The notes beneath the pieces are model-generated. The model was not told the DNA's origin, made no database searches, and saw only the letters and a program-made list of their open reading frames with translations. From assembly GCF_006345805.1 (NCBI RefSeq), contig NC_043007.1, forward strand, positions 21,948,001 through 22,012,000: a DNA stretch of 64,000 nt, written 5' to 3'. The DNA is from Octopus sinensis. Lineage: Eukaryota. Shown piece after piece: positions 19,293-43,648 of this stretch; position 1 is the first letter of the stretch; the number at the start of each line of letters is the position of its first letter. The position numbers and the translations under genes were made by a program.

Positions 19293-20477
19293 TTTCATAA
19301 ACAGCTGCCTTCTTGAACTTGATAACAAAAAAAGTCATTAAAGCAAAGATAACTTTAAAAATCTTTTTTAGAATTGCAAAACTTGAAGCAGATAAAGCGT
19401 TACAATGATAGCATGTAAGAACTGGCTTGAAAAACTCCCATTTGGATAAGGGGGAAAAAAAAATTCAAAGGATGCATATGAACTCTCATCTCTTGTAGGA
19501 ATATCAGATGTTCTACCATTGGACTAAAGCAATCATTTTAATTTTCTGATTTATTTTAGAAATTTCATTCTTAGCAGCAAGAATTCTATGTTTTTGATAT
19601 CATAAGAATATTATAAACTCTCAAGAAAATGTGAAATAATTCTTTTTTGGAATAGTGAATTAAAGCATAAGCAGCCTTTGACTTTTTTTTTTCTATCCTA
19701 GGTTTCCCAACCCAATATTTATTTACATGCTATTATTCATAGCTTTATGTGCTTCAAGATCCCTTAGTCTAAAAAAGTATTGTTTCATGGTGTCTCGAAG
19801 GTTTATAAGATTTTAAAACTTCATTTCATTATCCCAGTTTTACAAGTATATTTTGTATTTTCAAGTTATATTTTTTTAATTAGAATACCTATTTATATAA
19901 ATAGATCGGTCATTTATCTTAGTTTTTGCTGTTCTGCATTCATCTATCTATTAATGAAATGCTTGTTTTTAAGCGACACCCTAATAACAGGATTATCAAA
20001 TATAGGATATTTCAACAAGTCACGCAAGTATGAAAAGCAGACGTAAAATGATGATAATGATGAACAGCAACATAGTTTTATTCTAGAAATCTTTATTATA
20101 TAGGCATATAGCCTGAATAGAGAGGGGATATAACAACACAAAGCATGGGGTACATATAACGAAAGATAACGAACATAATTTTATTCTAATACAGGTAAAC
20201 TTTCTCATGTTAAATAATAACAACGACAACAAACTTGAATTGTCCCTTATCACAAACAAGTGATCAGCAGTACACCTTTAACAAAAAAAAAAGCCTCCGA
20301 CTGCTGTCAAAAAAGCTTACAAGAAACTGAAATGGTACGTTAAACTCAAACATCGCCTGCAGTTTTTATGCTCAGGCTGCTGAAAAGAAATGCTTGTCTT
20401 ACCAGCCGTGACTCAGAAAAATAGAAATGAAAATATAATTTGTCTTGTTCGTTATAAAGATGAACTTAATCATTAGG

Positions 20478-20568
20478 CACGTGAGCTTACGATGCGCCGA
20501 CCTTGTCGAATTACATGTTGTGGGTTGATGATACGTTGTTCTGACGCACCTTTGTACTATAAACGTCA
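20478..20568 (+). promoter_or_regulatory. putative SDR-A proximal promoter (E-box, two CRE half-sites, TATA)
   Basis: CACGTG 20478-83, TGACGCA 20542-48, TATAAA 20558-63, ACGTCA 20563-68; E-box and CRE half-sites conserved in copy B. Confidence 0.45.
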
Positions 20569-20636
20569 GAACTGTGAAAGTTGTGCTGTGAAAAAGCTGT
20601 GTTAGTCCTGGTTTCTGTCGAAATCTCAGTATATTA

Positions 20637-21584
20637 ATGATGTTGTTGACAATTTTGGCAGTTGTAGCCATAATAATCATTTTACCTTTGTCGATTCGCT
20701 ATTATATGAAAGGAGCCACCTGTACCAGCCCTGTTAAACTGGAAGGTAAAACAGTTATTATTACTGGAGGTAACTGTGGAATCGGATTCGAAACAGCCCG
20801 TAATTTATTACTACGAGGGGCCCGAGTGATCCTCGCATGTCGGGACTTAAATAAGGCGAAATCGGCTGCGGAACAATTAAGCGAATTAGGTTCAGGTGTT
20901 GTACTTGTTGAAAAACTTGATCTCTCAAGCTTCGATTCCATTCGAACATTCTGCAAGAATATTAAGCAACATATCACCTCTTTGGATATCCTTATAAACA
21001 ATGCGGGTGTTTATTTCCACCCGTATGCTGAGACAGAAGATGGCCTGGAAATGCATATGGGCGTCAATTATTTTGGTCCCTTCCTTTTGACACATCTTCT
21101 ACTGGAGTTATTAAAGAAGTCTGATTCACCCCGCGTCGTTTTTGTCGGGAGTGTTATTTACAAATGCGGGAAAATCGATTTTGACAACATGAATAAACCG
21201 GAGTTTTTCCATCAACACGGTGCCTACTGTGACAGTAAGTTAGCCTGTGCTTTATTTTGCCGTGAATTTAGCAATCGAATGTCAGACACTAATATCAACA
21301 TATATTATGTTCACCCGGGAATAGTAAACACAAATATAAGTCGGAACATTTTGAATTCATTTCCTCTGATACAAAAGGTCTCTGCTTTCAAATCACTTTT
21401 CAAGAATTGCCAAGAAGGTTGTCAAACTGTTGTATATTGTTCTGTTAGTGAAGAGACGAAAGACCAATCTGGTTGCTACTACAGTGAATGCCAGAGAGAC
21501 GAATGGGCAAATCAAGCTCTGGATAAACAACTTGCTATAAAGTTGTGGAACTTCAGCGAAAAAGTTACGGGATTAATCGAATGA
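20637..21584 (+). CDS. NADP(H)-type short-chain dehydrogenase/reductase, RDH11/12/13/14-like, single exon, 315 aa
   Basis: N-terminal hydrophobic anchor; TGGNCGIG; ACR basic residue; DLS; NNAG; tetrad N144-S172-Y197-K201; HPGxVxT; KLW C-terminal motif. Confidence 0.95.
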   Translation: MMLLTILAVVAIIIILPLSIRYYMKGATCTSPVKLEGKTVIITGGNCGIGFETARNLLLRGARVILACRDLNKAKSAAEQLSELGSGVVLVEKLDLSSFDSIRTFCKNIKQHITSLDILINNAGVYFHPYAETEDGLEMHMGVNYFGPFLLTHLLLELLKKSDSPRVVFVGSVIYKCGKIDFDNMNKPEFFHQHGAYCDSKLACALFCREFSNRMSDTNINIYYVHPGIVNTNISRNILNSFPLIQKVSAFKSLFKNCQEGCQTVVYCSVSEETKDQSGCYYSECQRDEWANQALDKQLAIKLWNFSEKVTGLIE

Positions 21585-22757
21585 AAATTGTTCTCTCACC
21601 AAATTATAAATATAAGGCTACCCTTCTTTTCTGTGGAATAATTATATAATAATAATAACGAAAGAAGAAAGACTCTCGGATGCAATTAATGTAAAAAAAT
21701 CTTGTTCGTCGCAAAATTAAAGAAATTCTATGAGAGTTTCGTTTTAAAGAAATACTGATTCGATGTTGGAAGGTGTGAAGGATCGTTTATTTTATACAAT
21801 AGAACCGTTGCAGGGAGCGAAGAAAGTATCTTGTATTTTAATGTATGTTTCGTTTTCTGAATGAAATCGACGGCAGATTAATTATTGATGTTACATGACA
21901 ATTAAGAAAATATTTATTTGTTTGTTTATTATCGATCATGATCAGTGATATTGGAATATCGAGGACTGGCTTTACTGCTTGAATGAAAACATTTTTCAAA
22001 CCAAATATTTGACAGTCCGTGTTGAAGTAATTAATGTTCGTGCGAATGTGTTGAGAATCTCAACATCTGTAGCTTTCTGGTTGTTTTCGTATCGTCGTGT
22101 TTTTAAGAAATCGGAATTTTCTCTTTTTAATTAGTTTAAAGAAAACCATTTCTGCCGAGACCAAAAACCTAATCCTAATCACTCTTTACCAATAATAAGT
22201 TTTTCAGTAATTGTATTAAATGCAGTTAAATACTCCCACATGAAGAAAAGGCAAAACTAAATGTGACCGTCGAGTATTTGTTTTGAAAAGTTTTCGTGTT
22301 GGATTTTAAATCCAGGATTCCCTAATTATTTAATGAGGGTCAGCGTAAGAAGATCCCTGATCGCAAATTGTAACACAAATATATGGTTTAATGAACATCA
22401 TTTTCAAAACTTTCTCACACGCCTTTCTTGAAGTGAGGTACAACAGTTTTCAGGCGTACCTACACAAATGTACCTCGCCCCATCGACTTTGTTTCTACAT
22501 AACTTTCTCCTGTACGTATGTGTGCGTCACAGTATTTTCTTTTTTTACGTTAAATTCCGATATAATCGTAATTTACAGCATCTGAAAGTTATTTATACAA
22601 ATCTTCATTAAAAAAATATCGTGTCTATATGGTTTTATATCATATCTATATCGTTGCATAATCATGTCTGTATTGGTAAGATGGAATTCAAAATCGGATT
22701 CAGTAACTTAAATTTCCAATGTTCCAATGCAAAAATACATAATCAATTACTTTAGAA

Positions 22758-22977
22758 GGTACTATTTAAGAAGAGTGGTCCCGGTGCGCGCACTCGCGCC
22801 AGCTAGTCGTGACTAGTCGATCCTAAAACGACTACCTAGCAAAGTAAATAAAATACAAAATTAATAATTTTTTACACAAAGTAAATAAAACACAAAGTAA
22901 AGATCGACTAGTCACGACTAGCTATCGCGGATGCGCGAGTGCGCGCACCGGGACCACTCTTCTTAAATAGTACTACC
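22758..22977. mobile_element. GC-rich palindromic MITE (~65-bp TIRs)
   Basis: GTACTATTTAAGAAGAGTGGTCCCGGTGCGCGCACTCGCGC inverted; flanked by TTAGAA; empty site in the adjacent tandem duplicate (23152-23157). Confidence 0.7.
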
Positions 22978-23514
22978 TTAGAAATTTCAATCGACTTTTT
23001 ATTCTGCCAATAAAATCCATTTTTTTTTATGGTTCTTATATCATATCTATATCGTTGCATATCATGTCTGTATTGTTATGATGGAATTCAAAATCGGATT
23101 CAGTAACTTAAATTTGCTATGTTCCAATGCAAAAATTCAAAATCAATTATTTTAGAAATTCCAATCGCCTTTTTATTCTGTCAATAAAATACTTTTCTTT
23201 TTAAACGATGGTATTTTCTAAGAGTTTTTTTTTTTATGAAAGGCATACCTTTCATCTTTTACTTGGGTAAGTCATTGGACTCTGGCCATGCTAGGGCACC
23301 ACCCTCAAGGATAGAGTTGAACAAATCAACCTACATACTTATTTATTTATTTTTTTGTGCCTGGTACTTATTCTATCAGTCTTTTTCCCCATATTGTAAA
23401 GTTATGGAGACGTAAACAAACCAACACTGGTTGTCAAGAGATGGGCAGGGGGAACAGAAACAAATACACTTGCACACACACACATATATGATAGGCTTCC
23501 ACACAGTTTCTTAA

Positions 23515-23898
23515 TTCTTTATTGTCCACAAGGGGCTAAACATAGAGGGGACAAGCAAGGACAGACAAAGGGATTAAGTCGATTACATCGACCCCAGTGC
23601 GTAACTGGTATTTAATTTATCGACCCCGAAAGGATGAAAGGCAAAGTCGACTTCAGCAGAGTTTGAACTCAGAACGTAACGGCAGACGAAATACCTATTT
23701 GTTTACTACCCACAAGGGGCTAAACACAGAGGGGACAAACAAGGACAGACAAACGGATTAAGTCGGTTATATCTACCCCAGTGCATAACTGGTACTTAAT
23801 TTATCGACCCCGAAAGGATGAAAGGCAAAGTCGACCTCGGCAGAATTTGAACCCAGAACGTAACGGCAGACGAAATACAGCTTAGCACTTCGCCCGGG
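23515..23898 (-). mobile_element. tandem family 1 SINEs
   Basis: Two antisense bodies. Confidence 0.8.
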
Positions 23899-24199
23899 GG
23901 AAAACCTGATTCAAATCTTTCTCTTTTTTGGCGCCACTTTGTGAACATCACCACTGGCTGCACCTGTCTTTCTCCAGAGGCAATGCGCCTGCACTAACGG
24001 AACTACGTACACAACACACACAGCTAAAGATGGTGGCTGAGGGCAGCACACTACACCTATCCTGTGAATCCTGTAAATAAACCAGTTGTAAACAGCGCTT
24101 GTGCTTGAGGTCTTCTCTCTTCACCTGCCAAAAGCCTGAAGTGATTGGAAGACTGTAAATGGAGCATACTACTTGTATGATGGTGACATCCGTTTACAA

Positions 24200-24431
24200 A
24201 GGCGGTGAGCTGGCAGAACCGTTAGCACGCCAGGCGAAATGCGTAGACGTATCTCATCTGCCGTTACATTCTGAGTTCAAATTCCGCTGAGGTCGACTTT
24301 GCCTTTCATCCTTTCGGGGTCGATTAAATAAGTACCATTTACACACTGGGGTCGATATACTCGACTTAATCTGTGTGTCTGTCCTTTTTTGTCCTCTCTG
24401 TGTTTAGCTCCTTGTGGGTAGCAAAGATATA
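24200..24431 (+). mobile_element. family 1 SINE with perfect 18-bp TSD
   Basis: GGTGACATCCGTTTACAA at 24182-24199 and 24432-24449. Confidence 0.9.
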
Positions 24432-24654
24432 GGTGACATCCGTTTACAACTGTCACATGGATCTAAGACAAGGAGACTAGATCTCACTCACATTAACAAG
24501 ATTCTTTTAATTTCTGTCTACACAATCCACTCCTAATGCATTTGTCTGCTTGTGGGATTGGCACAACAGCTGCAAGTCACTCCCATTTGTGCTTACCTGC
24601 CTCTGGTCAGCTCAATCAGGGTTGACTAAAGGTAGTCATACAACAATAACAACT

Positions 24655-25570
24655 ACAGAATCTGTTGAGGCAGATTTTCTATAGCTGAATGGCCTTCCTG
24701 TTGCCAACCCTCACCTGTGCCCAAGTAAGGTAATATTTCACCTGTTTCTTTACTACCCACAAGGGGCTAAACACAGAGGGGACAAACAAGGACAGAAAAA
24801 CAGATTAAGTCGATTACATCAACCCCAGTGCGTAACTGGTACTGGAGGACATTCGTTTACAACTATCACATGAATCTAAGGCAAAGCGAAAGTATCTCAT
24901 ACATGTGCACACACACACACACATGCACACAATAACAAGCTACTTTCACTTTCTATTTACAAAATCTACTCGTGACACTTTGGTCAGTCTGTGGGTGTAG
25001 TAGAAGACCTGAGTCCATGATGGTCAGGAAGTTCATGGAGGACATGGAGTGTGTAAAACAAGAGGTCTGTGAGTCGTTCTTATTTGCCCATCTGATGACT
25101 TACCTACCTCTGGTCAGCTCAATCAGGGTTGACTAAAGGTAGTCATACAACAATAACAACTACAACAACAACAGCTGAGACTATTCAACAAGTACACAAA
25201 ACCATTTCTCGAAAAGTACTCCAATATCTTCAAGTTACAATCAGATTATAATATAATAATACAAATCTGAAAATAAATGTAAAATAGTCAAAGAGAATTT
25301 TATATTTATTTAAACAAATTATCTAACTTATATATTTATTTTTATTAATATTGCGTATTAAAATTTCTTCGATAAATAATACATTTCAATGGTTTTTATT
25401 TATTCGTTTCATCTCACCATTTAGGCACAAGCGTAGCTGTGGGGTTAAGAGGCTTGCTTTCCAACCAGATGGTCTCAGATTCAGTCCCACTGTACAGCAC
25501 TTGGGGCAAATATCTACTACTATAACCATGGGCTATTCAATGCCTTGTGAATGAATTTGGTAGACAGAAA
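24655..25570. repeat. inverted duplicate of 39562-40680
   Basis: Roughly 90% identical by eye, including non-SINE sequence. Confidence 0.9.
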
Positions 25571-26004
25571 CTGAGTGGAAACATAATATATATATATGTA
25601 TTGTGCCGGTGGCACATAAAAAACACCATCCGATCGTGGCCGTTTGCCAGCCTTGTCTGGCACCTGTGCCGGTGGCACATAAAAAGCACCCACTACACTC
25701 ACGGAGTGGTTGGCATTAGGAAGGGCATCCAGCTGTATAAACACTGCCAGATCAGACTAGGCCTGGTGCAGTCTTCTGGCTTCCCAGACCCCAGTTGAAA
25801 TGTCCAATCCATGCCAGCATGGAAAGCAGACGTTAATCGATGATGATGATGATGATATATATAAAACAAAGGAAAGACAGAAGGTGGAATATATGAGAAT
25901 TTATTATTAATCATGACAGTTGTTTCGACACATTTAACATAGATTCCTCTTGGGTGGGACACTCAACAACTGGTTCAGGAGCATCTGGTGGTGCAGATGT
26001 TAAG

Positions 26005-26425
26005 AGAACCACCCGTTCGTGACCGTTGCCGGCGCCGCCCCGACTGGCCTCGTGCCGGTGGCACGTAAAAAGCACCATCCGTTCGTGTCCGTTGCCAGCC
26101 TCGCCTGGCCCCCGTGCCGGTGGCATGTAAAAGCACCATCCGCTCGTGTCCGTTGCCAGCCTCGCCTGGCCCCCGTGCCGGTGGCACGTAAAAGCACCAT
26201 CCATTCGTGGCCGTTTGCCAGCTCCGTCTGGCACCTGTGCGGGTGGCACGTAAAAAGCACCCACTACACTCACGGAGTGGTTGGCGTTAGGAAGGGCATC
26301 CAGCCATAGAAACACTGCCAGATCAGACTGGGCCTGATGCAGCCTTCTGGCTTCACAGACACCAGTTGAACCGTCCAACCCATGCTAGCATGGAAAGCGG
26401 ACGCTAAATGGTGATGATGATGATG
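26005..26425 (+). mobile_element. family 3 SINE with ~4 internal tandem units
   Basis: Repeated CGTGCCGGTGGCA..AAAAGCACC; (GAT)n tail. Confidence 0.85.
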
Positions 26426-26723
26426 ATATATATACATATCGTTATTCTTTAACATTTGTTTTCCATGCTAGTATTGGTTAGGCAGGTTCCACTCTGATTT
26501 TGGCTTAGTTTCTAAAACTGGGTGCCTTTCTTAATGCCATATATATATATATAGAATAATTATTTGAGGGAATATTAATCCTAACTTAGAGGGAAAAAAT
26601 TCAATTTAGAAATACTAAATCAAATTTCACACAATATTATATATATATATATATATAAAATTAGAAAAGAACCAATAGAAAGAGAGGTATATAGAGTGAG
26701 GGGGTGGAATTTATATATACATA

Positions 26724-28597
26724 TCTACTACATATGTGGAAAATCGGTGTGTGTGTTTGTTCGTGGCATTGTTAGCTAACTCCTTCTACATTATTTTATT
26801 GATTTTCATGAAACTTGACACATGAGTAGAACTTGTGTCTGGAAACCTCATGACGTACATAGATTGTTGAAAAAATTGATAATACGGCCCCTGGAAGGGA
26901 TCATATATCTACCTCATATAACTAGATTTTTATTTTAAACACCCAAGAGAAATAGCCGACAGCACCTGCACAATATTCTTTTTTATAACTCTCAAGGGAA
27001 ATAACCCATAGTACCTCCACTTACAGTTTTTAGTGAAGTGATCAATATTTGATTCTCACGATCAGCGCACCAAATTCTGAATTTTACTACTCACAGTTTT
27101 CAACTGCTAAGCCTTATTGCATTTTCTTCATGTGTGTACACTATCAATGCCCGTAACTCCAATAATTCTGCATTTTTCCAGTTAAAATTTTTTGATGACA
27201 GTACATAAATTTTTGATTCCAGAATGTACTTAACATGTCCCAATACAATGAACTCAAACTTTGAATGCCTAAAATTCTTTAAAAACGAAACCAAACTTCC
27301 ACACCACATTCAGTTGGGACACCCTGTGTCAGTTATACTTATTTTGCAAATTATAACATTTATTTTTATTTACAGTTCATACAACATTTTCATGAAACTA
27401 ATTGAGCCATCGAATTTAGAAATATTTTACAGGTTTCGTTGTTTACGTTCGATTACTTTGAATATTGATTTTTTTTGTGTGTCCAATTTCTAATTTTTGC
27501 AGACAATATCACTTTTATACTTTATTTGACACATGAATAGAACTCATGTCTGGAAACCTTGTGACATACTTAGATTGTTGAAAAAAAAATCAATAATAGG
27601 ACCCCTCCAATGGATCCTTCTATCTACTACATATTACTAATATTTTATTTAAACAACCCATACCACCTGCAGTTTTTAGTGAAGTGATCAATATTTGAGT
27701 CTCATGATCAGCCAACCTAATTCTGCATTTCACTACTCAGTTTTGAACTGCTAAACATTATTATTGCACTGTCTTGATTTGAATCTTAAACCTTAAAGAC
27801 TTCATTCATACATTTCTATACATAATACTTTTTTGAATGCCCATTACTCCGATAATTCTGCATTTTTTACAGTTCCACTTTTCCTATGACAGTAGATAAA
27901 TTTTTTTATTCTACAATGTATTTGTAGTGGCTTCATGCAGGCATAGCGTGGATTCGACCCTCGATTGCCAAATTTCACTTCACACTTCAACAGCGCTTTT
28001 CTCATGGTAAAACAATAGTTTTTCTGTGAATGACAGCAGTTATACATTTCCCAGATGCCTTCGCTAAACAGAATAATGTCTTTGCCACTTGACCCGTCTA
28101 ATCTCTTCTAAGCCACCAGGGGCTGGAATGGAGGTAGCAGACCTCCAACGAGATCATTTGTTCTCAACAATATGTCTATATTTCTGACTGCTTTTCGATA
28201 GTTATAAAAGCAAGAACTCTGTAAGCTAAAGGCAGTTACTGAGAGTGACCATCTGTAACTGTGAATGTTATTACTGCACTTTCTTCATTTCATTCTTAAA
28301 CCTTAAATATTTCATTCATATATTTATATACATATATACTACATGTATATATTATCTTTGATAAATTAGCCTTCATAAAGTTCACGAGTCAGAGTACTTT
28401 CTTGCCAACCTCCGAAAACCTCTCCTGCCAACCTCCAGCAATCTCTCCCTCCTCCAACTGACAGTTTTTTGTACTTTTTCATGACAGAAAATACACCTCT
28501 TGTGGCAGTTATAATGAAATTGCTTTCTTATATCAGAGTAATAAGGCATTTCAATAGAACATCTTTACACCCAGGAATTACCAGGTACACCAGCTAG
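26724..28597 (+). mobile_element. ~1.9-kb non-autonomous Helitron with internal diverged tandem repeats
   Basis: A|TCTACTA start; CpG-decayed hairpin ACCCAGG..CCAGGT then CTAG|T; internal repeats ~26800-27180 and ~27520-27870. Confidence 0.6.
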
Positions 28598-29835
28598 TGT
28601 ATATATATATATATATATATATGGCAAATGGAATAAGTATAAAAATGCATATTGTCTATTTAATTAAAAAATTCTATATGTGGCTGAAGATTGCTCTACA
28701 TTTTAAAACTGATGTAATACTTGCATTGTTTGATTAAATGATGTAGCATGAAATGGTTGTGCTGCACTACCTTTTTTAAGTACCATATTCATCTTAATCT
28801 AAATTTTGCTGAACTTATATATATATAGTGACTTTGAAGTTTTTTCTCTTTGCCTGCCAGAAGCCTGAACTACATAAAGAACAAAATGAATGATGGAAGG
28901 GGACGATATTCTTCCAATATCGTAAATCTTGCCTTCCATTATTAAAGATGAAAGGTAAAGTCGCCCTCAGCAGAATTTGAACTTAGAAATTTGAACAGTA
29001 ATAGTAATATTAAATTCGCTGAAACCAAGGATAGCGTTTACAGTATCAAGTGTTCTTCAACATCTGAATATCACAAAATCCTTTATAGAGGACTAAAATA
29101 TTTCTATGAGTAAGTGCTGTAAACGTCAACTGGGTTGGCATAATTGCTACGCTGCATGCTGATTGGTCAAAATGTTTTTATGAATAGAATGCTGTCACAC
29201 CCACTTAGTTGCGACATCTAAGCAGTACTTTGGTTGATTAAAATACAGTTCGTAAGATTTATGGTACAACTTGCTGGAGCCTGCTGGAAAGTATTTAAAG
29301 GAGAATTTCAAGCATTCTACTACAGTTATCAATTGTGAAACATAGCTGTTGTTTAATACTGCTACTAAATGAACCTGAAGATTGCAGAAAACATGAAAGT
29401 ACTTGTCTTATCATAATATGTAATGTTGTAGAAAAAGTAAAATTGTGAAAAATGCAAGAATTTAACATAAAACATAAGCGCTGGCATGGCTGTGTATTAA
29501 GAAGTTTGCTTCCTGACCAAACAGTTCCGGGTTCAGTCCCACTGCATGGCACCTTGGACAAGTGTTTTCTGCTATAGTTTTGGGTTGACCAAAGCCTTGT
29601 GCGAGGATTTGCTAGACAACAACTGAAGGAAGCCCGTCGTATGTGTGTGTCTTAGTGACTATGTTTGTCCCCATCACCGCTTGGTAAACAGTGTCAGTGT
29701 GTTTATGCCAGCGTAACTTAGTAGTTTAGCAAAGAGACCAATACGATAAGTACTTATCTTTAAAAAATAAGTCCTGAAGTCAATTTGTTGAAACTTGTAT
29801 TTTCAGGTACGCACACACACACACATACATATATA

Positions 29836-29908
29836 GGGAGAGTTTACGAAAAAAACAAAAGACGAAGACAGGTGGTGTACAAAACAAACAGATGTATTAG
29901 TATAACGC
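29836..29908 (-). mobile_element. tail fragment of the 62.2-kb pLTR family
   Basis: Reverse-complement similarity to 62345-62417; flanked by TA/CA repeats. Confidence 0.6.
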
Positions 29909-29933
29909 ACATATATATATATATATATATATA

Positions 29934-30124
29934 TGTAGGTCCCGGGTTGATTCGGGGTTAACCACAGTAAATAAGGTACTCAATACATAGTAGAGTAAAA
30001 TTAATTTATTATATAGAAGGAGCTTCTACAGGACTAGAACTGTTTCATTCAAGAGAAATCTTCAGGACCTGAAGATTTCTCTTGAATGAAACAGTTCTAG
30101 TCCTGTAGAAGCTCCTTCTATATA

Positions 30125-30130
<6 letters not shown>
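29934..30130. mobile_element. (TA)n-flanked foldback pLTR with perfect 63-bp hairpin
   Basis: Arms 30004-30066 / 30068-30130, 1-nt spacer; same family as 36934-37072. Confidence 0.75.
30063..30105 (+). ncRNA. type I hammerhead-like motif
   Basis: CAGGAC-CUGAAGA-U-UUC(UCUU)GAA-U-GAAA-CAGUUC-UA-GUCCUG; canonical core, U.U mismatch at the base of stem II. Confidence 0.5.
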
Positions 30131-30169
<39 letters not shown>

Positions 30170-30729
30170 AACATACATATATAAATATATACATACATAT
30201 ATATGTAAACTTATATACATAAGCGAAGCTGAGGTGACAGGATGATAAGAATACAAGATAATAAAAGCCCTCAAGAGAACCTTTCTGAAAAGATTTTTAT
30301 CAATTTGGCTTTTAACTAGGACTGTGGGAAAAGAGGTCAAAATACAAAAATACACCCCGATAAAAAAAAAAACATTTTTATTTTCATTTGAATGATAATA
30401 TATATGTTATAGGAACGTGCTGTTTGACAAAATAGTTTGCGAGATTTAGTTATGTTGGTATAGGTGCCAGGTCCAGTCTTACTGCGTGGCACCTTGGGCA
30501 AGTGTACTCTACTATAGCCTTGGGTCGATTGAAACCTTGTGAATAGACTTGATAATAGGAATTCCGAAAGAAGCCTGTCATATATGTGTGTGTGTGAGTC
30601 CTTGTGGCTGTATTTGTCTCCCACACCGGTTGACAACTTATGTTGGTTAGTTTACATACTAGTGACTTAGCGTTTGACAATAGAAACCAATAAAATAAGT
30701 GCCATGCTTAAAACGAAAGTACTGGAGTT

Positions 30730-31147
30730 GGATCATTGCGGTTTGAATGGCAGTTTTTTCTAGCGGTGTCATATGAAATTGTCACCCATAATTATGACCC
30801 TAGTATCGATCTATTGCATTTCAATCTGTTTTGGGGTTAGGGTTAGTTAAGGTTAGGGGTGGGGGGAAGGGTATCTTTTTTTCTTCAGAAATGTAAATAA
30901 ACCCAATCTGTTTCTTAAACGAGGGACATATTCATACAGCACAGAATGTTTTCACCTCAATAGACGTCACTGATTGGTTGAAATTGCAGAAAAAAAACAA
31001 CAAATATCTTACAAACTATAGAATTTTCTCAATAAAGCCAAGAGAAAAAGATGTTTTACAAACACATTCTACCAGTATACGAAGTTTAAAAGTGTTTAGT
31101 TACGTGGGAATTGTTTAAAAAAACTGCCAGTCAAACAGAAAAGATCC
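30730..31147. mobile_element. MITE with GG-initiated ~28-bp TIRs and 8-bp TSD, inserted in a SINE
   Basis: TSD CTGGAGT(T/C) at 30722-29 and 31148-55; TIR GGATC..GTTTGA.TGGCAGTTTTT; internal GGGGTTAGGGTTAG. Confidence 0.8.
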
Positions 31148-31309
31148 CTGGAGTCAATTTGTTCAGCTAAAATTCTTCAAGGCAGTGCCCCAGTATGACC
31201 TCAGTCTAATGACAGATACAAGGAGAAGATAATAGATAAAAAAAACCCATATTTTCCGGTATATAAAATGCACTTAGAAAATACCATCGTTTAAAAAAAA
31301 AAAGGTCTG

Positions 31310-31868
31310 GGATCTTTTCACTTTGACCGGCAGATTTTAAAAAATAATTTCTTTGTAACTAAACACTTTTAAACTTCGTATACTGGTAGAATGTGTTACA
31401 TAAAACATCTTTTCTTCTTGGCTTTCTTGAGAAAATTCTGTAGTTTGTAAGCTATTTGTTGTTTAATTTCTTGCATTTCAGCAATTTCAACCAATCAATG
31501 ACATCTATTGAGGTGAATACAATTTCTGCTGTAGTGTGTCAACAACATTTTCTGGCGGTATCATATCAATGTGTCACTGTTATTTATGACATGTTTCATA
31601 TCAGTTACGTTCGTATGAATAAAAGATTATCATTATTAAACTTTTATCAATAAACACAGATTCTAAGTTCACAACATATGCAGTTTTAATTTCCCTCTCT
31701 GTTGCACAGATACACACATTACATATTATATATTCGTTTAAGAAACAGATTGGGTTTATTTACATTTCTGAAGAAAAAAAAGATACCCTTCCCCCACCCC
31801 TAACCCAACCCCAACCCTAAAACAGATTGAAATGCAATAGATCGATACTAGGGTCATAATTATGGGTG
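31310..31868. mobile_element. truncated longer member of the same MITE family, opposite orientation
   Basis: GGATCTTTTCACTTTGACCGGCAG start; shared body; right TIR deleted. Confidence 0.75.
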
Positions 31869-33278
31869 GACATAATAGCTAGTCGTGACTAGTCGATCTT
31901 TACTTTGTGTTTTTGTGTTTTATTTACTTTGTGTAAAAAAATTATTAATTTTGTATTTTATTTACTTTGCTAGGTAGTCACGACTAGCTAGCGCGATTGC
32001 GCGAGTGCGCGCACCGGGACCACTCTTCTTAAATAGTACCTTCTAAGCTAATTGATTTTGTATTTTTGCACTGGAACATTGGAAATTTAAGTTACTGAAT
32101 CCGATTTTGAATTCCATCTTACCAATACAGACATGATTATGCAACGATATAGATATGATATAAAAACCATATAGACACGATATTTTTTTAATGAAGATTT
32201 GTATAAATAATTTTCAGATGCTGTAAATTACGATTATATCGGAATTTAACATAAAAAAAGAAAATGATGTGACGCACACGTACGTACAGGAGAAAGTTAT
32301 GTGGAAACAAAGTCGATGGGGCGAGGTACATTTGTGTCGGTACGCCTGGAAACTGTTGTACCTCACTTAAAGAAAGTCCTGTGAGAAAGTTTTGAAAATG
32401 ATGTTCATTAAACCATATATTTGTGTTACAATTTGCGATCAGGGATCTTCTTACGCTGACCCTCATTAAATAATTAGGGAATCCTGGATTTAAAGTCCAA
32501 CACGAAAACTTTTCAAAACAAATACTCGACGGTCACATTTAGTTTTGCCTTTTCTTCATGTGGGAGTATTTAACTGCATTTAATACAATTACTGAAAAAC
32601 TTATTATTGGTAAAGAGTTCATTAGGATTAGGTATTGGTCCCGGCAGGAATGGTTTTCTTTAAACAAATTAAAAAGAGAAAATTCCGATTTCTTAAAAAC
32701 ACGACGATACGAAAACAACCAGAAAGCTACAGATGTTGAGATACTCAACACATTCGCACGAACATTAATTACTTCAACACGGACTGTCAAATATTTGGTT
32801 TGAAAAATGTTTTCATTCAAGCACTAAAGCCAGTCCTCGATATTCCAATATCACTGATCATGATCGATAATAAACAAACAAATAAATATTTTCTTAATTG
32901 TCATGTAACATCAATAATTAATCTGCCGTCGATTTCATTCAGAAAACGAAACATACATTAAAATACAAGATACTTTCTTCGCTCCCTGCAACGGTTCTAT
33001 TCTATAAAATAAACGATCCTTCACACCTTCCAACATCGAATCAGTATTTCTTTAAAACGAAACTCTCATAGAATGTCTTTAATTTTGTGACGAACAAGAT
33101 TTTTTTACATTAATTGCATCCAAGAGTTTTTCTTCTTTCGTTATTATTATTTTTTAATTATAATAAATCTCTGGGCCCTGACCCTAGCCACATTCAGATG
33201 GCTGATCCCTGTATTTTTTAATTATTCCACAGAAAAGAAGGGTAGCCTTATATTTATAATTTGGTGAGAGAACAATTT

Positions 33279-34226
33279 TCATTCGATTAATCCCGTAACT
33301 TTTTCGCTGAAGTTCCACAACTTTACAGCAAGTTGTTTATCCAGAGCTTGATTTGCCCATTCGTCTCTCTGGCATTCACTGTAGTAGCAACCAGATTGGT
33401 CTTTCGTCTCTTCACTAACAGCACAATATACAACAGTTTGACAACCCTCTATGCAAGTCTTTGAAAATAGTTTGAAAAGATAGTGCATTGGTTTCCAAAG
33501 AAATGAATTAAAAAGGTTTCTTCCTATATCTGTGTTCACTGCTCCTGGGTGAACATAATATATGTTAATATTAGTGTCTGACATTCGATTGCTAAATTCA
33601 CGGCAAAATAAAGCACAGGCTAACTTACTGTCGCCGTAGGCATTGTGTTTTTGGAAAAATGTTTTTCTAATCGTGTTGTTAAAATCGATTTTCCCGCATT
33701 TGTAAATCCCACTCCCGACAAAAACGACGCGGGGTGAATCAGACTTCTTTAATAACTCCAATAGAAGATGTGTCAAAAGGAAGGGACCAAAATAATTGAC
33801 GCCCATATGCATTTCCAGGCCATCTTCTGTCTCAGCATACGGGTGGAAATAAACACCCGCATTGTTTATAAGGATATCCAAAGAGGTGATATGTTGCTTA
33901 ATATTCTTGCAGAATGTCCGAATGGAATCGAAGCTTGAGAGATCAAGTTTTTCAACAAGTACAACACCTGAACCTAATTCGCTTAATTGTTCCGCAGCCG
34001 ATTTTGCCTTATTTAAGTCCCGACATGCGAGGATCACTCGGGCCCCTCGTAGTAATAAATTACGGGCTGTTTCGAACCCGATTCCACAGTTACCCCCAGT
34101 AATAATAACTGTTTTGCCTTCCAGTTTAACAGGGCTGGTACAGGTGGCTCCTTTCATAAAGTAGCGAATCGACAAGGGTAAAATTATTGTTGTGCCCACA
34201 GCTGCCAAAATTGTCAATAACATCAT
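33279..34226 (-). CDS. SDR paralogue B, RDH11/12/13/14-like, single exon, 315 aa
   Basis: Same motifs and intact tetrad; 36 substitutions versus copy A (~89% identity). Confidence 0.95.
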   Translation of the reverse strand: MMLLTILAAVGTTIILPLSIRYFMKGATCTSPVKLEGKTVIITGGNCGIGFETARNLLLRGARVILACRDLNKAKSAAEQLSELGSGVVLVEKLDLSSFDSIRTFCKNIKQHITSLDILINNAGVYFHPYAETEDGLEMHMGVNYFGPFLLTHLLLELLKKSDSPRVVFVGSGIYKCGKIDFNNTIRKTFFQKHNAYGDSKLACALFCREFSNRMSDTNINIYYVHPGAVNTDIGRNLFNSFLWKPMHYLFKLFSKTCIEGCQTVVYCAVSEETKDQSGCYYSECQRDEWANQALDKQLAVKLWNFSEKVTGLIE

Positions 34227-35021
34227 TAATTTCGACAGAAACCAGGACTAACACAGCTTTTTCACAGCACAGATTTTACAGTTCTGACGTTTAGAGTACA
34301 AAGGTGCGTCAGAACTACATATAATCTCACATCAGGTATTTCTTCACAATCGGCGCATCATAAGCTCACGTGCAAATGTGTAAGTTCACCTTTATAACGA
34401 ACATGACAAATTTAAATATTTTCACCTCTATTTTTGTAAGTCTCACACTCAGCCGGAAGGACTAGTATTTCTTTTCCGCACCCTGCGCATAAGGACTCGA
34501 GGCAATGATTGGGTTTAACGTGCCATTTACCAATTTATTCGGTAACAGCGTGCTTGACGGCAGTCGGAACCTTTTTATTTTTACAGTGTACTGAGTCCCG
34601 CTTGTTTGTAATAAGGGACGATTGAAGCAATCCTTCGATATAACTCGACAAAATCTAAAACAAACACTCGGCTGTTTCCGTGACAACTCGACAATTCACG
34701 AATCACCATAAGACATTTTTGTGTATAAATATATTGTTTATTCTGTGTTTACCTTGTTGCGAACTCTATTGACCTTCCTCTCTCTATAATATACAAATAC
34801 ATACGAACGTAGCAGGTAACTGCTAACCTTTGGGTGCTGTTTTGGAACCCACTGTGTTTACCACTCTGAGTGGTTGGGGTTGGTGCAATTTGCCTCTTAC
34901 TCTATCGCACCCTAGTATGAAACCCAACCAATCACAACCCTCAAATAAGTCACGTAAGACAGTCTGTCCCAAACATCATTTGAGCCTCTTCATCTTCGTG
35001 ATGTCTCTCACCAACGACATC

Positions 35022-37075: not shown

Positions 37076-37106
<31 letters not shown>

Positions 37107-37111
<5 letters not shown>

Positions 37112-38050
37112 AGAAAATAGTAAAGTGTGAAAAAACGACAGAAGGCTTAAATGTTAAAAAATATATATATTTGTGTCAAAATGTCTGGAGAATATTGGAA
37201 AAATTTTTTTCCTTTCCTTAAAATGACATAATTTTAAAATTTTTAAAGAAATTACCGGTTTCGCGTGTAGCTTTTCAAATTTCTTGTGACGTTATGTTTA
37301 TATTGCATGGAATTATCGTTGTTTTTATTTCCAGGAGATTTCTAAATAAGGGGAGGTAGTGAGTGATTTTTTCCGGTGTAGGGGAGATAATCGCTTAAAA
37401 AATTTTTTTTTCCATTTCCTTGTTAATTTCTCTGTGTCAGTATGTTCGGATGGTTGAGTCTGGGTTTGTACTTTTCAATGAAGAATGTTTCCTTGTTCAG
37501 TCTCATTTGTGTTGATGATCCGAAAGCACATTGGTAAAATGGGAAGATTAAAAATTGTGGCAGTAGTTGCTTTGCGCATTTCTCAATGTGCTCACTAAAA
37601 GGTATCATTCTATATTCTGGAATGCAATCTGTTGTCGATGCAGTGTGCATCTGCGCCTGAGTGATAGTCCCGTGGAACCCACGTAGTCTTGGTGGCAGCC
37701 CGAGCATTTAATAACATAAATTATGTTTTCAGAGGCACAAGTAAAGTTAGATTTGATCTTAAATTTCTGTCCCTCTTTAAAGAGGAATTCTGATCCTTCC
37801 AATAGGTTAGGACATGTTGCACAGTTCGATCTACCACATTTTTTTACTTTTGCATCCGTAATTTTAGAAGACAATTTTGCCTTTGTGAGAATCTTTTTAA
37901 GTGATTTAGGCTGTTTGTAGCTTTTAATGATTTGGTGTATGTTTAGAATTTCCTTTAATTTTGGGTTTTTATGAAGTATTGGTAAATTCTGGGTGATGAT
38001 GGTGAAGGCTTCTTTGTTTCTGGGGTTGTATGTAGATATGTAAGGTAGTA
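37107..38050 (-). mobile_element. Penelope-like element 3' part (linker + GIY-YIG endonuclease + 3' region), left arm, one frameshift
   Basis: Reverse complement of 38052-38995; a C is missing near 37620. Confidence 0.9.
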
Positions 38051-38051
38051 T

Positions 38052-38995
38052 TACTACCTTACATATCTACATACAACCCCAGAAACAAAGAAGCCTTCAC
38101 CATCATCACCCAGAATTTACCAATACTTCATAAAACCCAAAATTAAAGGAAATTCTAAACATACACCAAATCATTAAAAGCTACAAACAGCCTAAATCAC
38201 TTAAAAAGATTCTCACAAAGGCAAAATTGTCTTCTAAAATTACGGATGCAAAAGTAAAAAAATGTGGTAGATCGAACTGTGCAACATGTCCTAACCTATT
38301 GGAAGGATCAGAATTCCTCTTTAAAGAGGGACAGAAATTTAAGATCAAATCTAACTTTACTTGTGCCTCTGAAAACATAATTTATGTTATTAAATGCTCG
38401 GGCTGCCACCAAGACTACGTGGGTTCCACGGGACTATCACTCAGGCGCAGATGCACACTGCATCGACAACAGATTGCATTCCCAGAATATAGAATGATAC
38501 CTTTTAGTGAGCACATTGAGAAATGCGCAAAGCAACTACTGCCACAATTTTTAATCTTCCCATTTTACCAATGTGCTTTCGGATCATCAACACAAATGAG
38601 ACTGAACAAGGAAACATTCTTCATTGAAAAGTACAAACCCAGACTCAACCATCCGAACATACTGACACAGAGAAATTAACAAGGAAATGGAAAAAAAATT
38701 TTTTAAGCGATTATCTCCCCGACACCGGAAAAAATCACTCACTACCTCCCCTTATTTAGAATCTCCTGGAAATAAAAACAACGATAATTCCATGCAATAT
38801 AAACATAACGTCACAAGAAATTTGAAAAGCTACACGCGAAACCGGTAATTTCTTTAAAAATTTTAAAATTATGTCATTTTAAGGAAAGGAAAAAAATTTT
38901 TCCAATATTCTCCAGACATTTTGACACAAATATATATATTTTTTAACATTTAAGCCTTCTGTCGTTTTTTCACACTTTACTATTTTCTTATATAT
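38052..38995 (+). mobile_element. Penelope-like element 3' part, right arm; GIY-YIG ORF 38227-38679
   Basis: KCGRSNCATC Cys motif, NIIYVIKC..C..DYVGST..LRRR...H, LNKETFFIEKYKPRLN; ends in TA repeat. Confidence 0.9.
38815..38854 (+). ncRNA. minimal type I hammerhead-like motif in the PLE 3' region (mirror copy 37246-37285, minus)
   Basis: AAGAAAU-UUGAAAA-GC(UACAC)GC-GAAA-CCGG-UA-AUUUCUU; 7-bp stem I, palindromic ACCGGU; two core transitions. Confidence 0.55.
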
Positions 38996-41106: not shown

Positions 41107-42138
41107 TCATTTTAAGTAAGGCAGATCATTGTTATGAGTATTTACACATTGGGGTGGATATTTATCCATAATCTTATATAAAATGTTTTCATTCAGAGTG
41201 GGGGATCCATCAACGGGTTGTAGATGTAATATTTTGTCCATGTTTTGATTGCAGGAATTAGATTTCCCTAAAATGAAATCAGTGTTGTCTAACTGCATGT
41301 TATTTACAGTTTCAGTCCCAAAATTAAAGTTGCTAATTCTGTCAAGAAATCCATCACCGTTTCTATTAGTATATGCGCCGCCGTGGTTGATGTTGCTGTT
41401 TAGTCTTGGAAAAGCATTAAAGTCAATGTTGTTACTGAAGCTGGTACCATTACTTACATCAACAGGTGCACCAAGGTCGATGTTGTTATATATATCAGTA
41501 AATACATCATCCTGATTGATGTTGTAATTTACATAAGATGACGAACCAAAATTTGTGTTGTTATTTGCAAAAGTGGATGTTTGGGAGTTCTCGTTATCAC
41601 TCCAGTCAAAAGCAGTCTCAGAACCGGCAGAATCATAACTAGTAAGACTATACTGTGAACCAGACATAACACTGGAGGGAGACGTGCTTGAAATGTCAGA
41701 GCAGCTACTGAAACTTCCACTGATATCCAGATTATTTGATCCAGGAAGGCAATAAAAGCCATTAAAGCTCGAAGAAATTTTAGATTGATCGTATTTTTGA
41801 TCAGAAACATTTACAGGAGAGGATGCTTCAAAGGAAGCCGATGGATAATAAATTGGCTGTTGATAAGCATTAAATGTATTTGTATGTGCAGGTGTGTTAT
41901 TGATAAGATTATCATTCAGGTAATTTCCTTCATACGTTTCCGTTTGGGGATACGTTTGCCTTGTCCAGTCCTGAGTAATATCCCTGAAGCTAGGATGGCC
42001 ATAAAGTTCATTGGAGTTGATGTCTCTAACTTCATCTGTGAGATTAGACAACAGCCTTCCCATATTTTGTTTCATATTTGTAAGCATCGTTACGATGCTT
42101 TTTAACATTATTTGTTTTTTTTCTTCTTCCAAGAGATT
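41107..42138 (-). CDS. ATF3/Fos-family bZIP gene, last coding exon (zipper + long Ser/Asn-rich tail, 343 aa)
   Basis: Acceptor TTTTATCAATTTCAG; phase 0; L48/L55/M62 heptad in register with c-Fos; open to TAA. Confidence 0.85.
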   Translation of the reverse strand, partial: NLLEEEKKQIMLKSIVTMLTNMKQNMGRLLSNLTDEVRDINSNELYGHPSFRDITQDWTRQTYPQTETYEGNYLNDNLINNTPAHTNTFNAYQQPIYYPSASFEASSPVNVSDQKYDQSKISSSFNGFYCLPGSNNLDISGSFSSCSDISSTSPSSVMSGSQYSLTSYDSAGSETAFDWSDNENSQTSTFANNNTNFGSSSYVNYNINQDDVFTDIYNNIDLGAPVDVSNGTSFSNNIDFNAFPRLNSNINHGGAYTNRNGDGFLDRISNFNFGTETVNNMQLDNTDFILGKSNSCNQNMDKILHLQPVDGSPTLNENILYKIMDKYPPQCVNTHNNDLPYLK

Positions 42139-42979
42139 CTGAAATTGATAAAAGAAAGAAAAATTAAATCCAGGTTTTTACTTAACATTTCAGAAAGTTT
42201 AGTATGTATAAAAAAAGCACAAGAGGTTACAATATGTTATTCTTTTATTCTTTTACTTGTTTCAGTCATTTGACTATGGCCATGTTGGAGCAAATCGACC
42301 CCAGGACTTATTCTTTCTAAGCCTAGTACTTATTCTATCAGTCTCTTTTGCTGAACCGCTAAGTTATGGGAACATAAACACACCAGCATTGGTTGTCAAG
42401 CAATGTTGGGGGACAAACACACACACACATATATATATATATATACGACGGGCTTCTTTCAGTTTCCACCTACCAAATCCACTCACAAGACTTTGGTCGG
42501 CCCGAGGCTATAGTAGAAGACACTTGCCCAAGGTGCCATTCGGAGGGACTGAACCCAGAACTATGTGGTTGGTAAGCAAGCTATTTACCACAGCAGGAAT
42601 CTTTTAGAGAGATATTCTTCCCAAAGTGTAAGTTGTTTATGAGTTTGCAAATGGTGTTGTATGGACTTTGACTTTGACAAGCATGCATAACTGATTGATT
42701 AATTATTGACCAAATTATTCAATCAAAGAACTGAATAGTTCATTGGTTAAATAGTCATCCAATTAACAAATAATAAAGAAACAAAATAGAGCCAGTGTGT
42801 GTATGTTCATCAGTGGCCCAATGACCCTCCCTAGATACAACAAAGTCTCATATAATATTCTTCCCTCTAAATGATGACACTAGCACCATCTCAAAACATT
42901 GCCCCAAACTAACATACCAGCGATTAATTGAAATACAAATAATGTAATATACAGTATTAGTAAAGTATCGACTACTTAC

Positions 42980-43629: not shown

Positions 43630-43648
43630 CACCTATATATATATATAC

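What the first reader, a model, noticed from the sequence alone, without database searches (positions are those of the whole stretch)
20637..34226. Inverted SDR pair: homogenised Rossmann fold, hypervariable substrate loops
Seen: 36 of 315 residues differ. Residues 24-172 are identical, with only a handful of silent changes, while 29 differences fall in 173-198 and 229-259, with multi-nucleotide codon changes. Known: these segments (after the catalytic Ser, before YxxxK, and after PGxVxT) form the SDR substrate pocket. Inference: gene conversion between inverted copies homogenises the scaffold while selection keeps two substrate specificities, possibly for different retinoids or aldehydes. The substrate is unknown.
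Basis: partly seen in the sequence, partly recalled or inferred. Interest (0 to 1): 0.8.

Follow-up and report, generated by a model that had tools for sequence, protein, structure and literature searches.

The report
Octopus dehydrogenase gene pair, partly homogenised
Two old, convergently oriented copies of an intronless retinol-dehydrogenase-like gene in Octopus keep overwriting each other by gene conversion except in a ~260-bp stretch encoding the two substrate loops and at the 5' end; it is a clean new example of a well-known evolutionary pattern, and the enzymes' function is still unknown.

Summary
They differ at 36 residues, 29 of them in codons 173-198 and 229-259. Codons 24-172 differ only at 6 silent sites.

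The window is Octopus sinensis chromosome CM016869.1. The same tail-to-tail pair is present in an independent O. vulgaris assembly, so it is not a chimera or uncollapsed haplotypes.

Gene conversion is well supported:
- Synonymous divergence is 0.06 outside the patches and 0.34 inside them.
- The 3' flank is about 97% identical between copies, the same as between orthologues. The 5' flank is 81%.
- Outside the patches the copies group by species. In patch 1 the B type groups across species with O. bimaculoides copy 2 (99% bootstrap).

The duplication therefore predates the O. bimaculoides split, and homogenisation continued after the sinensis/vulgaris split.

Selection for two substrate specificities is plausible but not shown. 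dN/dS in the patches is about 1. These loops are the least constrained part of the whole RDH11-14-like family. Patch 2 is not trans-specific in the available data.

The enzymes are intact, membrane-anchored classical SDRs with unknown substrates. This is a new member of a known kind, the "divergence peak under gene conversion" seen in red/green opsins and frog ATP1A1.

The parts
20637..21584 (+). Gene A: intronless 315-codon ORF, RDH11-14-like classical SDR with an N-terminal membrane helix
   Evidence: ORF. (PF00106, 121 bits against cut-off 26.6). (43-48% identity to proteins named retinol dehydrogenase 11/12/13/14). (AF2 pLDDT 93.1, helix 2-25).
33279..34226 (-). Gene B: paralogue of A, 315 codons, 88.6% identical in protein
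   Evidence: (AF2 pLDDT 92.0, same fold).
20234..22925 (+). Inverted-repeat arm carrying A: about 400 nt of 5' flank, the CDS and about 1340 nt of 3' flank
   Evidence: The inner boundary is sharp at about 22925 in both species.
31875..34627 (-). Inverted-repeat arm carrying B
20706..21152 (+). Homogenised tract, codons 24-172 of A (partner 33711-34157 in B): 6 silent differences in 447 nt
   Evidence: dS 0.059, dN 0. (15 species-type sites, 0 paralogue-type sites against O. bimaculoides).
21153..21230 (+). Patch 1, codons 173-198 of A (partner 33633-33710 in B): beta5-alphaF loop between catalytic Ser172 and Tyr197. 18 nt and 11 aa differences. The A and B types are shared with O. bimaculoides copies 1 and 2.
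   Evidence: (7 type sites against 1 species site). (B-type clade, 99% bootstrap).
21231..21320 (+). Middle segment, codons 199-228 (partner 33543-33632): YxxxK helix and beta6. Two silent differences. Whether it is converted or merely constrained cannot be decided.
   Evidence: dS 0.125 on 17 silent sites. (1 type site, 1 species site).
21321..21413 (+). Patch 2, codons 229-259 of A (partner 33450-33542 in B): lid loop after the PG motif. 29 nt and 18 aa differences. It has the lowest model confidence.
   Evidence: dS 0.31, dN 0.43. (pLDDT 60-71).
21414..22736 (+). Homogenised tract: codons 260-315 plus about 1.15 kb of 3' flank (partner about 32100-33449 in B)
   Evidence: (species and cross sites outnumber type sites). 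(A-B identity 96.9-97.2%, equal to orthologue identity of 96.7-97.6%).
20237..20705 (+). Unconverted 5' region of A: 400 nt upstream plus codons 1-23 (partner 34158-34626 in B). 81% identical between A and B, 96-99% between orthologues.
   Evidence: 59 + 10 type sites, 0 species sites.. (codons 1-23 dS 0.39).
33156..33219 (-). 64-nt B-specific insertion 59 nt after the stop codon, present in O. sinensis B and O. vulgaris B and absent from all A-type copies
22926..31874 (.). Spacer of about 9 kb between the arms. It is repeat-rich and collinear (not inverted) with O. vulgaris.

Best explanation
A and B are an old duplicate pair of an intronless, ER-membrane-anchored, NADP(H)-type classical SDR of the RDH11-14-like group, specific to octopods. 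The duplication predates the split of O. bimaculoides from O. sinensis/vulgaris.

Since then, repeated non-reciprocal exchange between the convergent copies has overwritten codons 24-172, codons 260-315 and about 1.15 kb of 3' flank. This continued until at least the time of the sinensis/vulgaris split.

Two regions have escaped. One is the 5' flank plus the membrane-anchor codons 1-23. The other is an island of about 260 bp (codons 173-259) that encodes the two loops closing over the active site.

Shown: conversion, the age of the pair, the position of the island, and intactness of both enzymes.

Inferred: the island persists because conversions that swap the loop sequences are selected against, so the paralogues have diverged in substrate or partner recognition. 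This holds most clearly for the B-type patch 1, which acquired at least 6 replacement changes and then stayed recognisable across species. The diverged promoters may also give the copies different expression.
For: Source and reality of the pair:
- The window is O. sinensis GCA_006345805.1 CM016869.1.
- The same tail-to-tail pair is found in O. vulgaris GCA_951406725.2 OX597824.1.

Evidence for conversion:
- Nei-Gojobori A against B: outside the patches dS 0.061 and dN 0.004; in the patches dS 0.343 and dN 0.342. Silent-site excess: Fisher P = 9e-4.
- Flanks: 5' 81% identical between A and B against 96-99% between orthologues. 3' flank 96.9-97.2% between A and B, equal to orthologues.
- Four-taxon sites with O. 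bimaculoides: core 15 species / 0 type; C-terminus 10 / 0; patch 1, 1 / 7.
- NJ bootstrap: core (Obim_1, Obim_2) 93%, all sinensis/vulgaris copies together 100%; patch 1 (Obim_2, Osin_B, Ovul_B) 99%.
- After the sinensis/vulgaris split: 8-9 species-specific shared sites and 5 cross sites against 9 type sites in the homogenised parts. The patches and the alignable 5' region (-400 to codon 23) hold 16 + 23 + 69 type sites against a single species site, the codon-177 position.
- Codon 177 is TGC in both O. sinensis copies and TAC in all three O. vulgaris copies.
- O. vulgaris A carries B-type states at 16 sites where its off-chromosome copy C and O. sinensis A keep A-type states.
- Run test: P = 0.006, <1e-4 and 0.039 in the three species.

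Enzyme intactness:
- Motifs and catalytic residues are intact in both.
- Both give confident SDR models. Secondary-structure differences and pLDDT minima are confined to the patches. The nearest folds are LPOR and 3RD5.
Against: - dN/dS in the island is about 1 and not significantly above 1. It is 0.4-1.4 even between orthologues.
- The loops are the least conserved part of the family. A selectively neutral escape from conversion is therefore not excluded.
- In patch 2, O. bimaculoides copy 2 does not group with B, and copy 1 lies in a 473-N assembly gap. Patch 2 divergence may therefore be lineage-specific.
- There are only 33 silent sites in the patches.
- No expression or enzymatic data exist.
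- The loop-to-pocket mapping rests on SDR topology, not on measured contacts.
Confidence: 0.6

Rival explanations
1. Neutral escape. Conversion is real, but the island exists without selection for difference. The weakly constrained loops accumulate substitutions several-fold faster than the constrained core. Once locally too mismatched, heteroduplex rejection blocks conversion there, which is self-reinforcing. The two enzymes may be functionally equivalent.
For: - dN/dS is about 1 in the patches between paralogues and 0.4-1.4 between orthologues.
- The patches have the highest family-wide entropy and the lowest model confidence.
- Patch 2 is not trans-specific.
- A non-coding 64-nt indel and the non-coding 5' flank also escape conversion.
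Against: - Patch 1 types are retained in three species while both sides were homogenised independently in each lineage.
- A-type patch 1 is well conserved out to a more distant octopod.
- Short tracts do reach into the island edges (codons 173 and 177, nt 758) without spreading.
Confidence: 0.3
2. Recent duplication with a burst of positive selection in the loops and no gene conversion.
For: The core and 3' flank differ by only 1-3%. Nearly all patch changes are replacements.
Against: - Silent divergence is also about 6-fold higher in the patches.
- The 5' flank is 19% diverged.
- B-type patch 1 is shared with O. bimaculoides.
- Species-specific shared sites arose after the sinensis/vulgaris split.
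Confidence: 0.03
3. Assembly artefact: a chimera, or two haplotypes left uncollapsed as an inverted duplicate.
For: The same window holds a perfect 1.9-kb palindrome (37105-38995) that looks like a possible long-read artefact.
Against: - An independent O. vulgaris assembly has the same pair, the same orientation, a collinear spacer and the same type-specific differences.
- The 5' flanks are only 81% identical.
- O. bimaculoides also has both patch-1 types.
Confidence: 0.01
4. The divergent patches were imported into one copy by ectopic conversion from a third, more distant SDR paralogue.
For: The mosaic structure and multi-nucleotide codon changes. Other RDH14-like genes lie on the same chromosome (P0010).
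Against: - No other SDR copy is in the window.
- The next-closest paralogues (no more than 52% identity) do not resemble B's patches more than A's.
- The 5' flank shows comparable old divergence, as expected from a common old duplication.
Confidence: 0.03

Closest known systems
Red/green opsin (OPN1LW/OPN1MW) concerted evolution with a divergence peak at exon 5 (Teshima & Innan 2008, as reviewed in PMC3924837)
   Same: Nearby duplicates are kept almost identical by ongoing conversion. They are more similar within a species than to their orthologues, with a sharp peak of divergence over the residues that determine ligand or spectral specificity.
   Different: The opsin copies are tandem and the functional sites are experimentally known. 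Here the copies are inverted and convergent, function is unknown, the peak spans 57-87 codons rather than a few sites, and selection is not demonstrated.
ATP1A1 paralogues of Leptodactylus frogs (bioRxiv 10.1101/2020.08.04.234435)
   Same: Trans-specific neofunctionalised duplicates in which a small set of substitutions is maintained against homogenising gene conversion.
   Different: In the frogs the maintained substitutions were shown by protein engineering to confer toxin resistance. No functional assay exists for the octopus SDR pair.
Arm-to-arm gene conversion in palindromes and inverted repeats (for example primate sex-chromosome palindromes; from general knowledge)
   Same: Inverted arms separated by a spacer exchange sequence non-reciprocally without deleting the spacer. 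Non-coding arm sequence is homogenised too.
   Different: The arms here are short (2.7 kb) and only partly homogenised. Identity ranges from 81% to about 99% along the arm rather than being uniformly above 99.9%.
Vertebrate RDH11/RDH12/RDH13/RDH14 (SDR7C) and the related LPOR / 3RD5 structures
   Same: 43-48% identity to proteins named RDH11-14. N-terminal membrane helix, TGxxxGxG, NNAG and the N-S-Y-K tetrad are present. The best fold matches are LPOR and 3RD5 at TM 0.74-0.79.
   Different: This is an intronless octopod-specific lineage. The family's near-invariant Tyr at position 191 is Phe in A and B. Substrates are untested, and no one-to-one orthology to a vertebrate RDH was established.

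Membership tests
Classical short-chain dehydrogenase/reductase (Pfam PF00106 adh_short) | Profile match above the curated threshold | tested here: met
   A scores 121.2 bits and B 119.5 bits against a cut-off of 26.6.
Classical short-chain dehydrogenase/reductase (Pfam PF00106 adh_short) | Cofactor motif TGxxxGxG, NNAG, and the catalytic Asn-Ser-Tyr-Lys tetrad | tested here: met
   T43-G44-x-N46-x-G48-I49-G50, N121-N122-A123-G124, N144, S172, Y197 and K201 are present in both copies. All of these are invariant across 65 family members except S172 and I49, which are nearly invariant (90% or more).
Classical short-chain dehydrogenase/reductase (Pfam PF00106 adh_short) | Rossmann-type alpha/beta fold | tested here: met
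   AF2 models have pLDDT 93.1 and 92.0 and pTM 0.92 and 0.91. Foldseek gives probability 1.00 to LPOR, 3RD5 and many other SDRs.
RDH11/12/13/14-like retinol dehydrogenases (SDR7C) | Closest named relatives are RDH11-14, and an N-terminal membrane anchor is present | tested here: met
   Non-octopod full-length hits of 43-48% identity are named RDH11/12/13/14. A hydrophobic helix is predicted at residues 2-25.
RDH11/12/13/14-like retinol dehydrogenases (SDR7C) | NADPH-dependent retinal or aldehyde reductase activity | not testable with these tools
   No enzymatic data exist. R69 and K73 after beta2 suggest an NADP(H) preference, but only from general SDR knowledge.
RDH11/12/13/14-like retinol dehydrogenases (SDR7C) | One-to-one orthology with a particular vertebrate RDH | not tested
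   No family-wide phylogeny was made. Source names vary between RDH11-, 12- and 14-like for the same octopus lineage.
Concerted evolution by gene conversion with a selection-maintained divergence peak | Paralogues are closer to each other than to orthologues in the homogenised region, including silent and non-coding sites | tested here: met
   Core: 6 nt between A and B against 21-23 nt to O. bimaculoides. 15 species sites and 0 type sites. dS 0.06 against 0.34. 3' flank A-B identity equals orthologue identity.
Concerted evolution by gene conversion with a selection-maintained divergence peak | The peak of divergence is paralogue-specific across species (trans-specific) | tested here: inconclusive
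   Met for patch 1 (7 type sites against 1; 99% bootstrap). Not met or untestable for patch 2: Obim_2 groups with Osp_X, and Obim_1 lies in an N gap.
Concerted evolution by gene conversion with a selection-maintained divergence peak | Evidence that selection, not just lack of conversion, maintains the peak | tested here: inconclusive
   dN/dS is 1.0 in the patches (Fisher P = 1.0 against neutrality). The N:S ratio differs from the rest of the gene (38:9 against 2:9, P = 2e-4), which also fits relaxed constraint.

The most novel reading that the evidence does not exclude
The island marks a true neofunctionalisation. Octopods would carry two membrane-bound RDH-like reductases whose lid loops give them different substrate or isomer specificities, for example different retinal isomers in the rhodopsin/retinochrome system, or lipid aldehydes. 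Their diverged promoters would give different tissue expression. Both differences would be actively defended against a conversion process that keeps the catalytic scaffold identical.
Probability: 0.3. Interest if true: 0.55.

Novelty: new member of a known kind. Interest (0 to 1): 0.35.

Why it matters
The pair is a compact, well-delimited natural experiment. Two enzymes have an identical catalytic scaffold and differ almost only in the two active-site loops, the membrane anchor and the promoter.

If the loops confer different specificities, the pair points directly to the specificity determinants of the poorly understood RDH11-14/LPOR-like SDR branch. No retinoid-bound structure appeared among the structure-search hits for this branch.

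It would also add an invertebrate example of selection opposing gene conversion.

On the practical side, the public gene models for these genes are wrong in O. vulgaris and O. bimaculoides (truncated, spliced or fused). The intact 315-codon intronless ORFs should replace them.

Tried and rejected
- A compensated frameshift as the cause of the multi-nucleotide changes in patch 2. The codon-by-codon view with five other sequences shows ordinary substitutions and no length change.
- The 86%-identity dip in the 3' flank at 22094-22193 as a third island. It is an alignment shift caused by a small indel in a short repeat in O. sinensis B only.
- Looking up XP_014786541.1 (P0001) in the contig collection: not on record. 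Its residues 200-275 may be filled in or chimeric, because copy 1 has a 473-N gap there, so it was not used as evidence for patch 2.
- Identifying the species behind Logan runs SRR11869390-94 (sequence Osp_X) through the paper library: no hits.
- A literature search for this gene pair or for octopus RDH gene conversion: nothing specific.
- The bacterial promoter/terminator scan of the 5' flank is irrelevant for an animal genome and was ignored.
- Residue-level contact mapping of the patches to the active site. The structure tools return no coordinates, so only secondary structure and confidence could be used.
- The orientation of the O. bimaculoides copies (both on the + strand) was not interpreted. 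Copy 2 sits on a 3.9-kb contig between N gaps and could be mis-oriented.


Full report
**1. What is there**

The window holds two intact 948-nt ORFs: A at 20637-21584 (+) and B at 33279-34226 (-). They align without gaps and differ at 68 nucleotides and 36 of 315 residues.
- Codons 24-172 give identical protein, with six silent differences.
- Eleven replacements lie in codons 173-198 and eighteen in 229-259.
- Fourteen codons differ at two or three positions.

The clustering is not chance: hypergeometric P = 7e-19, and no permutation out of 2000 puts more than 19 differences into two windows of those sizes, against 29 observed.

The ORFs lie in inverted arms of about 2.7 kb (20234-22925 and 31875-34627). 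They are convergent, with a repeat-rich spacer of about 9 kb. No other SDR copy is in the window.

**2. Source and reality of the pair**

Exact-protein look-ups place both genes on Octopus sinensis chromosome CM016869.1 of GCA_006345805.1.

An independent assembly of the sister species O. vulgaris (GCA_951406725.2, OX597824.1) is 97-98% identical and collinear through the spacer. It carries the same tail-to-tail pair of intact 315-codon ORFs.

The differences that distinguish A from B are conserved between the two species. The pair is therefore neither an assembly chimera nor two haplotypes.

Related copies elsewhere:
- O. vulgaris has a third, A-type copy on another chromosome. It shares only the 2.8-kb arm.
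- O. bimaculoides has two copies 5 kb apart. Copy 1 is interrupted by 473 Ns.
- Argonauta hians has a single intronless copy within 20 kb.
- An unidentified octopod from Logan assemblies yields a single A-like sequence, here called Osp_X.

**3. The mosaic is one of coalescence time, not only of constraint**

Nei-Gojobori estimates for A against B:

| Region | dS | dN |
|---|---|---|
| Codons 24-172, 199-228, 260-315 | 0.061 | 0.004 |
| The two patches | 0.343 | 0.342 |
| Codons 1-23 | 0.39 | 0.10 |

The excess of silent differences in the patches is significant (9 of about 33 silent sites against 9 of about 154; P = 9e-4).

Non-coding sequence tells the same story.
- The 400 nt upstream are 81% identical between A and B but 96-99% identical between orthologues.
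- The 1.15 kb downstream of the stop codon are 96.9-97.2% identical between A and B. That is the same as between orthologues (96.7-97.6%).

Purifying selection cannot explain low silent and non-coding divergence. Differing histories along the sequence can.

**4. Direct evidence for concerted evolution**

Four-taxon sites from O. sinensis A and B and O. bimaculoides copies 1 and 2:

| Segment | Sites grouping by species | Sites grouping by paralogue type |
|---|---|---|
| Codons 24-172 | 15 | 0 |
| Codons 276-315 | 10 | 0 |
| Patch 1 | 1 | 7 |

Segment NJ trees agree.
- In the core, the two O. bimaculoides copies group together (93%) and all five sinensis/vulgaris copies group together (100%).
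- In patch 1, O. bimaculoides copy 2 joins the B copies (99%).

So the duplication is older than the O. bimaculoides split. Island dS is 0.34, against 0.16 between the species.

Conversion also went on after the sinensis/vulgaris split.
- In the homogenised parts there are 8-9 sites shared by both copies of one species and 5 cross sites, against 9 orthology-consistent sites. In the patches and the alignable 5' region essentially every informative site is orthology-consistent.
- Codon 177 is TGC in both O. sinensis copies and TAC in all three O. vulgaris copies.
- O. vulgaris A carries B-type states at 16 sites, in small clusters including codon 173. At these sites O. sinensis A and the off-chromosome copy C keep the A-type state. 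This indicates short B-to-A tracts.
- A Sawyer-type run test is significant in all three species (P = 0.006, <1e-4, 0.039).

**5. What the island encodes**

Both proteins are classical SDRs.
- They match PF00106 at about 120 bits.
- They have TGxxxGxG, NNAG, and the residues N144, S172, Y197 and K201.
- Their nearest named relatives are RDH11/12/13/14 at 43-48% identity.
- The nearest solved relatives are 3RD5 and light-dependent protochlorophyllide reductases.

AlphaFold2 models of A and B are confident (pLDDT 93.1 and 92.0). Each has an N-terminal helix at residues 2-25.

By the secondary structure of the models:
- Patch 1 is the long loop between beta5 (catalytic Ser172) and helix alphaF (Tyr197/Lys201).
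- Patch 2 is the segment after beta6 and the PG motif, with two short helices. This is the 'substrate-binding loop' or lid of SDRs according to established SDR structural knowledge.

The two models differ in secondary structure only there, and confidence is lowest there (60-82). I could not measure contacts because no coordinates are returned.

**6. Is selection needed?**

Against selection:
- dN/dS in the patches is 1.0 (patch 1 0.65, patch 2 1.37), not distinguishable from neutrality.
- It is 0.4-1.4 even between orthologues.
- Across 60 other family members these two segments are the most variable part of the protein (1.75 and 1.97 bits against about 1.0).
- In patch 2, O. bimaculoides copy 2 groups with the A-like outgroup rather than with B, and copy 1 is unknown. 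Patch 2 divergence may be specific to the sinensis/vulgaris lineage.
- The 30 codons between the patches have too few silent sites to say whether they were converted. One island covering codons 173-259 is an equally good description.

In favour of selection:
- Patch 1 types have persisted in three species while both sides were homogenised independently.
- The B stem carries at least six shared replacements (M185T, E189T, H192Q, Q193K, and changes at 195 and 198) and no shared silent change.
- A-type patch 1 is conserved out to Osp_X.
- Small tracts reach the island edge without spreading.

I therefore rate conversion at about 0.9, selection-maintained loop divergence at about 0.55-0.6, and neutral escape at about 0.3.

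**7. Rivals rejected**
- A recent duplication with a selective burst fails on silent divergence, the 5' flank and trans-specific patch 1.
- Import from a third paralogue has no candidate donor.
- A compensated frameshift does not explain patch 2.
- The apparent extra dip at 22094-22193 is an alignment shift.

**8. Comparison with what is known**

A 'peak of divergence' inside duplicates that are otherwise homogenised by conversion is an established signature. Red/green opsin exon 5 is the textbook case (PMC3924837). Frog ATP1A1 is a recent, functionally proven one (10.1101/2020.08.04.234435).

The octopus pair fits this kind. It differs in being inverted and convergent, in the breadth of the peak, and in lacking any functional evidence. 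It is a new member of a known kind.

No paper in the searchable library describes it.

**9. Verdict**

This is a tidy, well-documented case of mosaic concerted evolution in an octopod-specific RDH-like SDR pair. It is of moderate interest and would rise if the loops prove to set different specificities.

Noticed in passing
window 37105-38995: A near-perfect 1.9-kb palindrome (arms 37105-38050 and 38052-38995, 100% complementary in three blocks). Each arm carries an ORF (for example 38227-38679) with a weak, sub-threshold GIY-YIG hit (E 0.003). The whole segment is absent from the orthologous O. vulgaris site. It is either an inverted-dimer insertion of a Penelope-like element or a long-read foldback artefact of the O. 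sinensis assembly.
   Followed up: partly
L002 9571-12360 (O. vulgaris OX597827.1), equivalent to window 20203-23016: A third, intact A-type copy on a different chromosome in O. vulgaris. It shares only the 2.8-kb arm, including 91 nt of A-specific flank. It keeps A-type states where the linked O. vulgaris A copy has acquired B-type states, so it acts as an out-of-reach control for conversion. It could also be a misplaced contig.
   Followed up: partly
L008 9932-10879 and 23600-24547; L002 10001-10948; L009 5010-6204 and 10001-10948: Public gene models of these genes are wrong. O. vulgaris CAI9730597.1 (182 aa), CAI9732554.1 (213 aa, spliced to a spurious exon 26 kb away) and CAI9730596.1 (292 aa) all sit on intact 315-codon intronless ORFs. 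O. bimaculoides A0A0L8FVH0 (504 aa) fuses copy 1 with copy 2. Copy 1 is split by a 473-N gap.
   Followed up: yes
window 33156-33219: A 64-nt insertion 59 nt after the stop codon. It is specific to B copies in both O. sinensis and O. vulgaris, and it sits inside otherwise homogenised 3' flank.
   Followed up: partly
window 22633-23157 and 31975-32165: The inner ends of the arms carry nested short repeats. These are a 97-nt direct repeat at 22661-22757 and 23061-23157, a 65-nt direct repeat at 22909-22973 and 31975-32039, and a self-complementary stretch at 22759-22973. Together they suggest a small TIR-type element at the duplication boundary.
   Followed up: no
window 4199-4702, 61324-61815, 23512-23878, 26002-26251: Transposon debris and repeats around the pair. 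There is an ORF with DUF6451 (E 9e-15) and a similar-looking ORF with no Pfam hit, both possibly retroelement remnants. A repeat unit of about 183 nt is present ten or more times in the window. There are also GC-rich 61-nt tandem units.
   Followed up: no
window 41107-44226 (-): The upstream neighbour of B is a gene model of about 436 aa, low-complexity and Ser/Asn-rich, with no Pfam domain. A 435-aa domain-less gene model also lies next to the SDR pair in O. bimaculoides; their homology was not checked. Its orientation relative to the B-type copy differs between the two assemblies, which may reflect a mis-oriented contig in O. bimaculoides.
   Followed up: no
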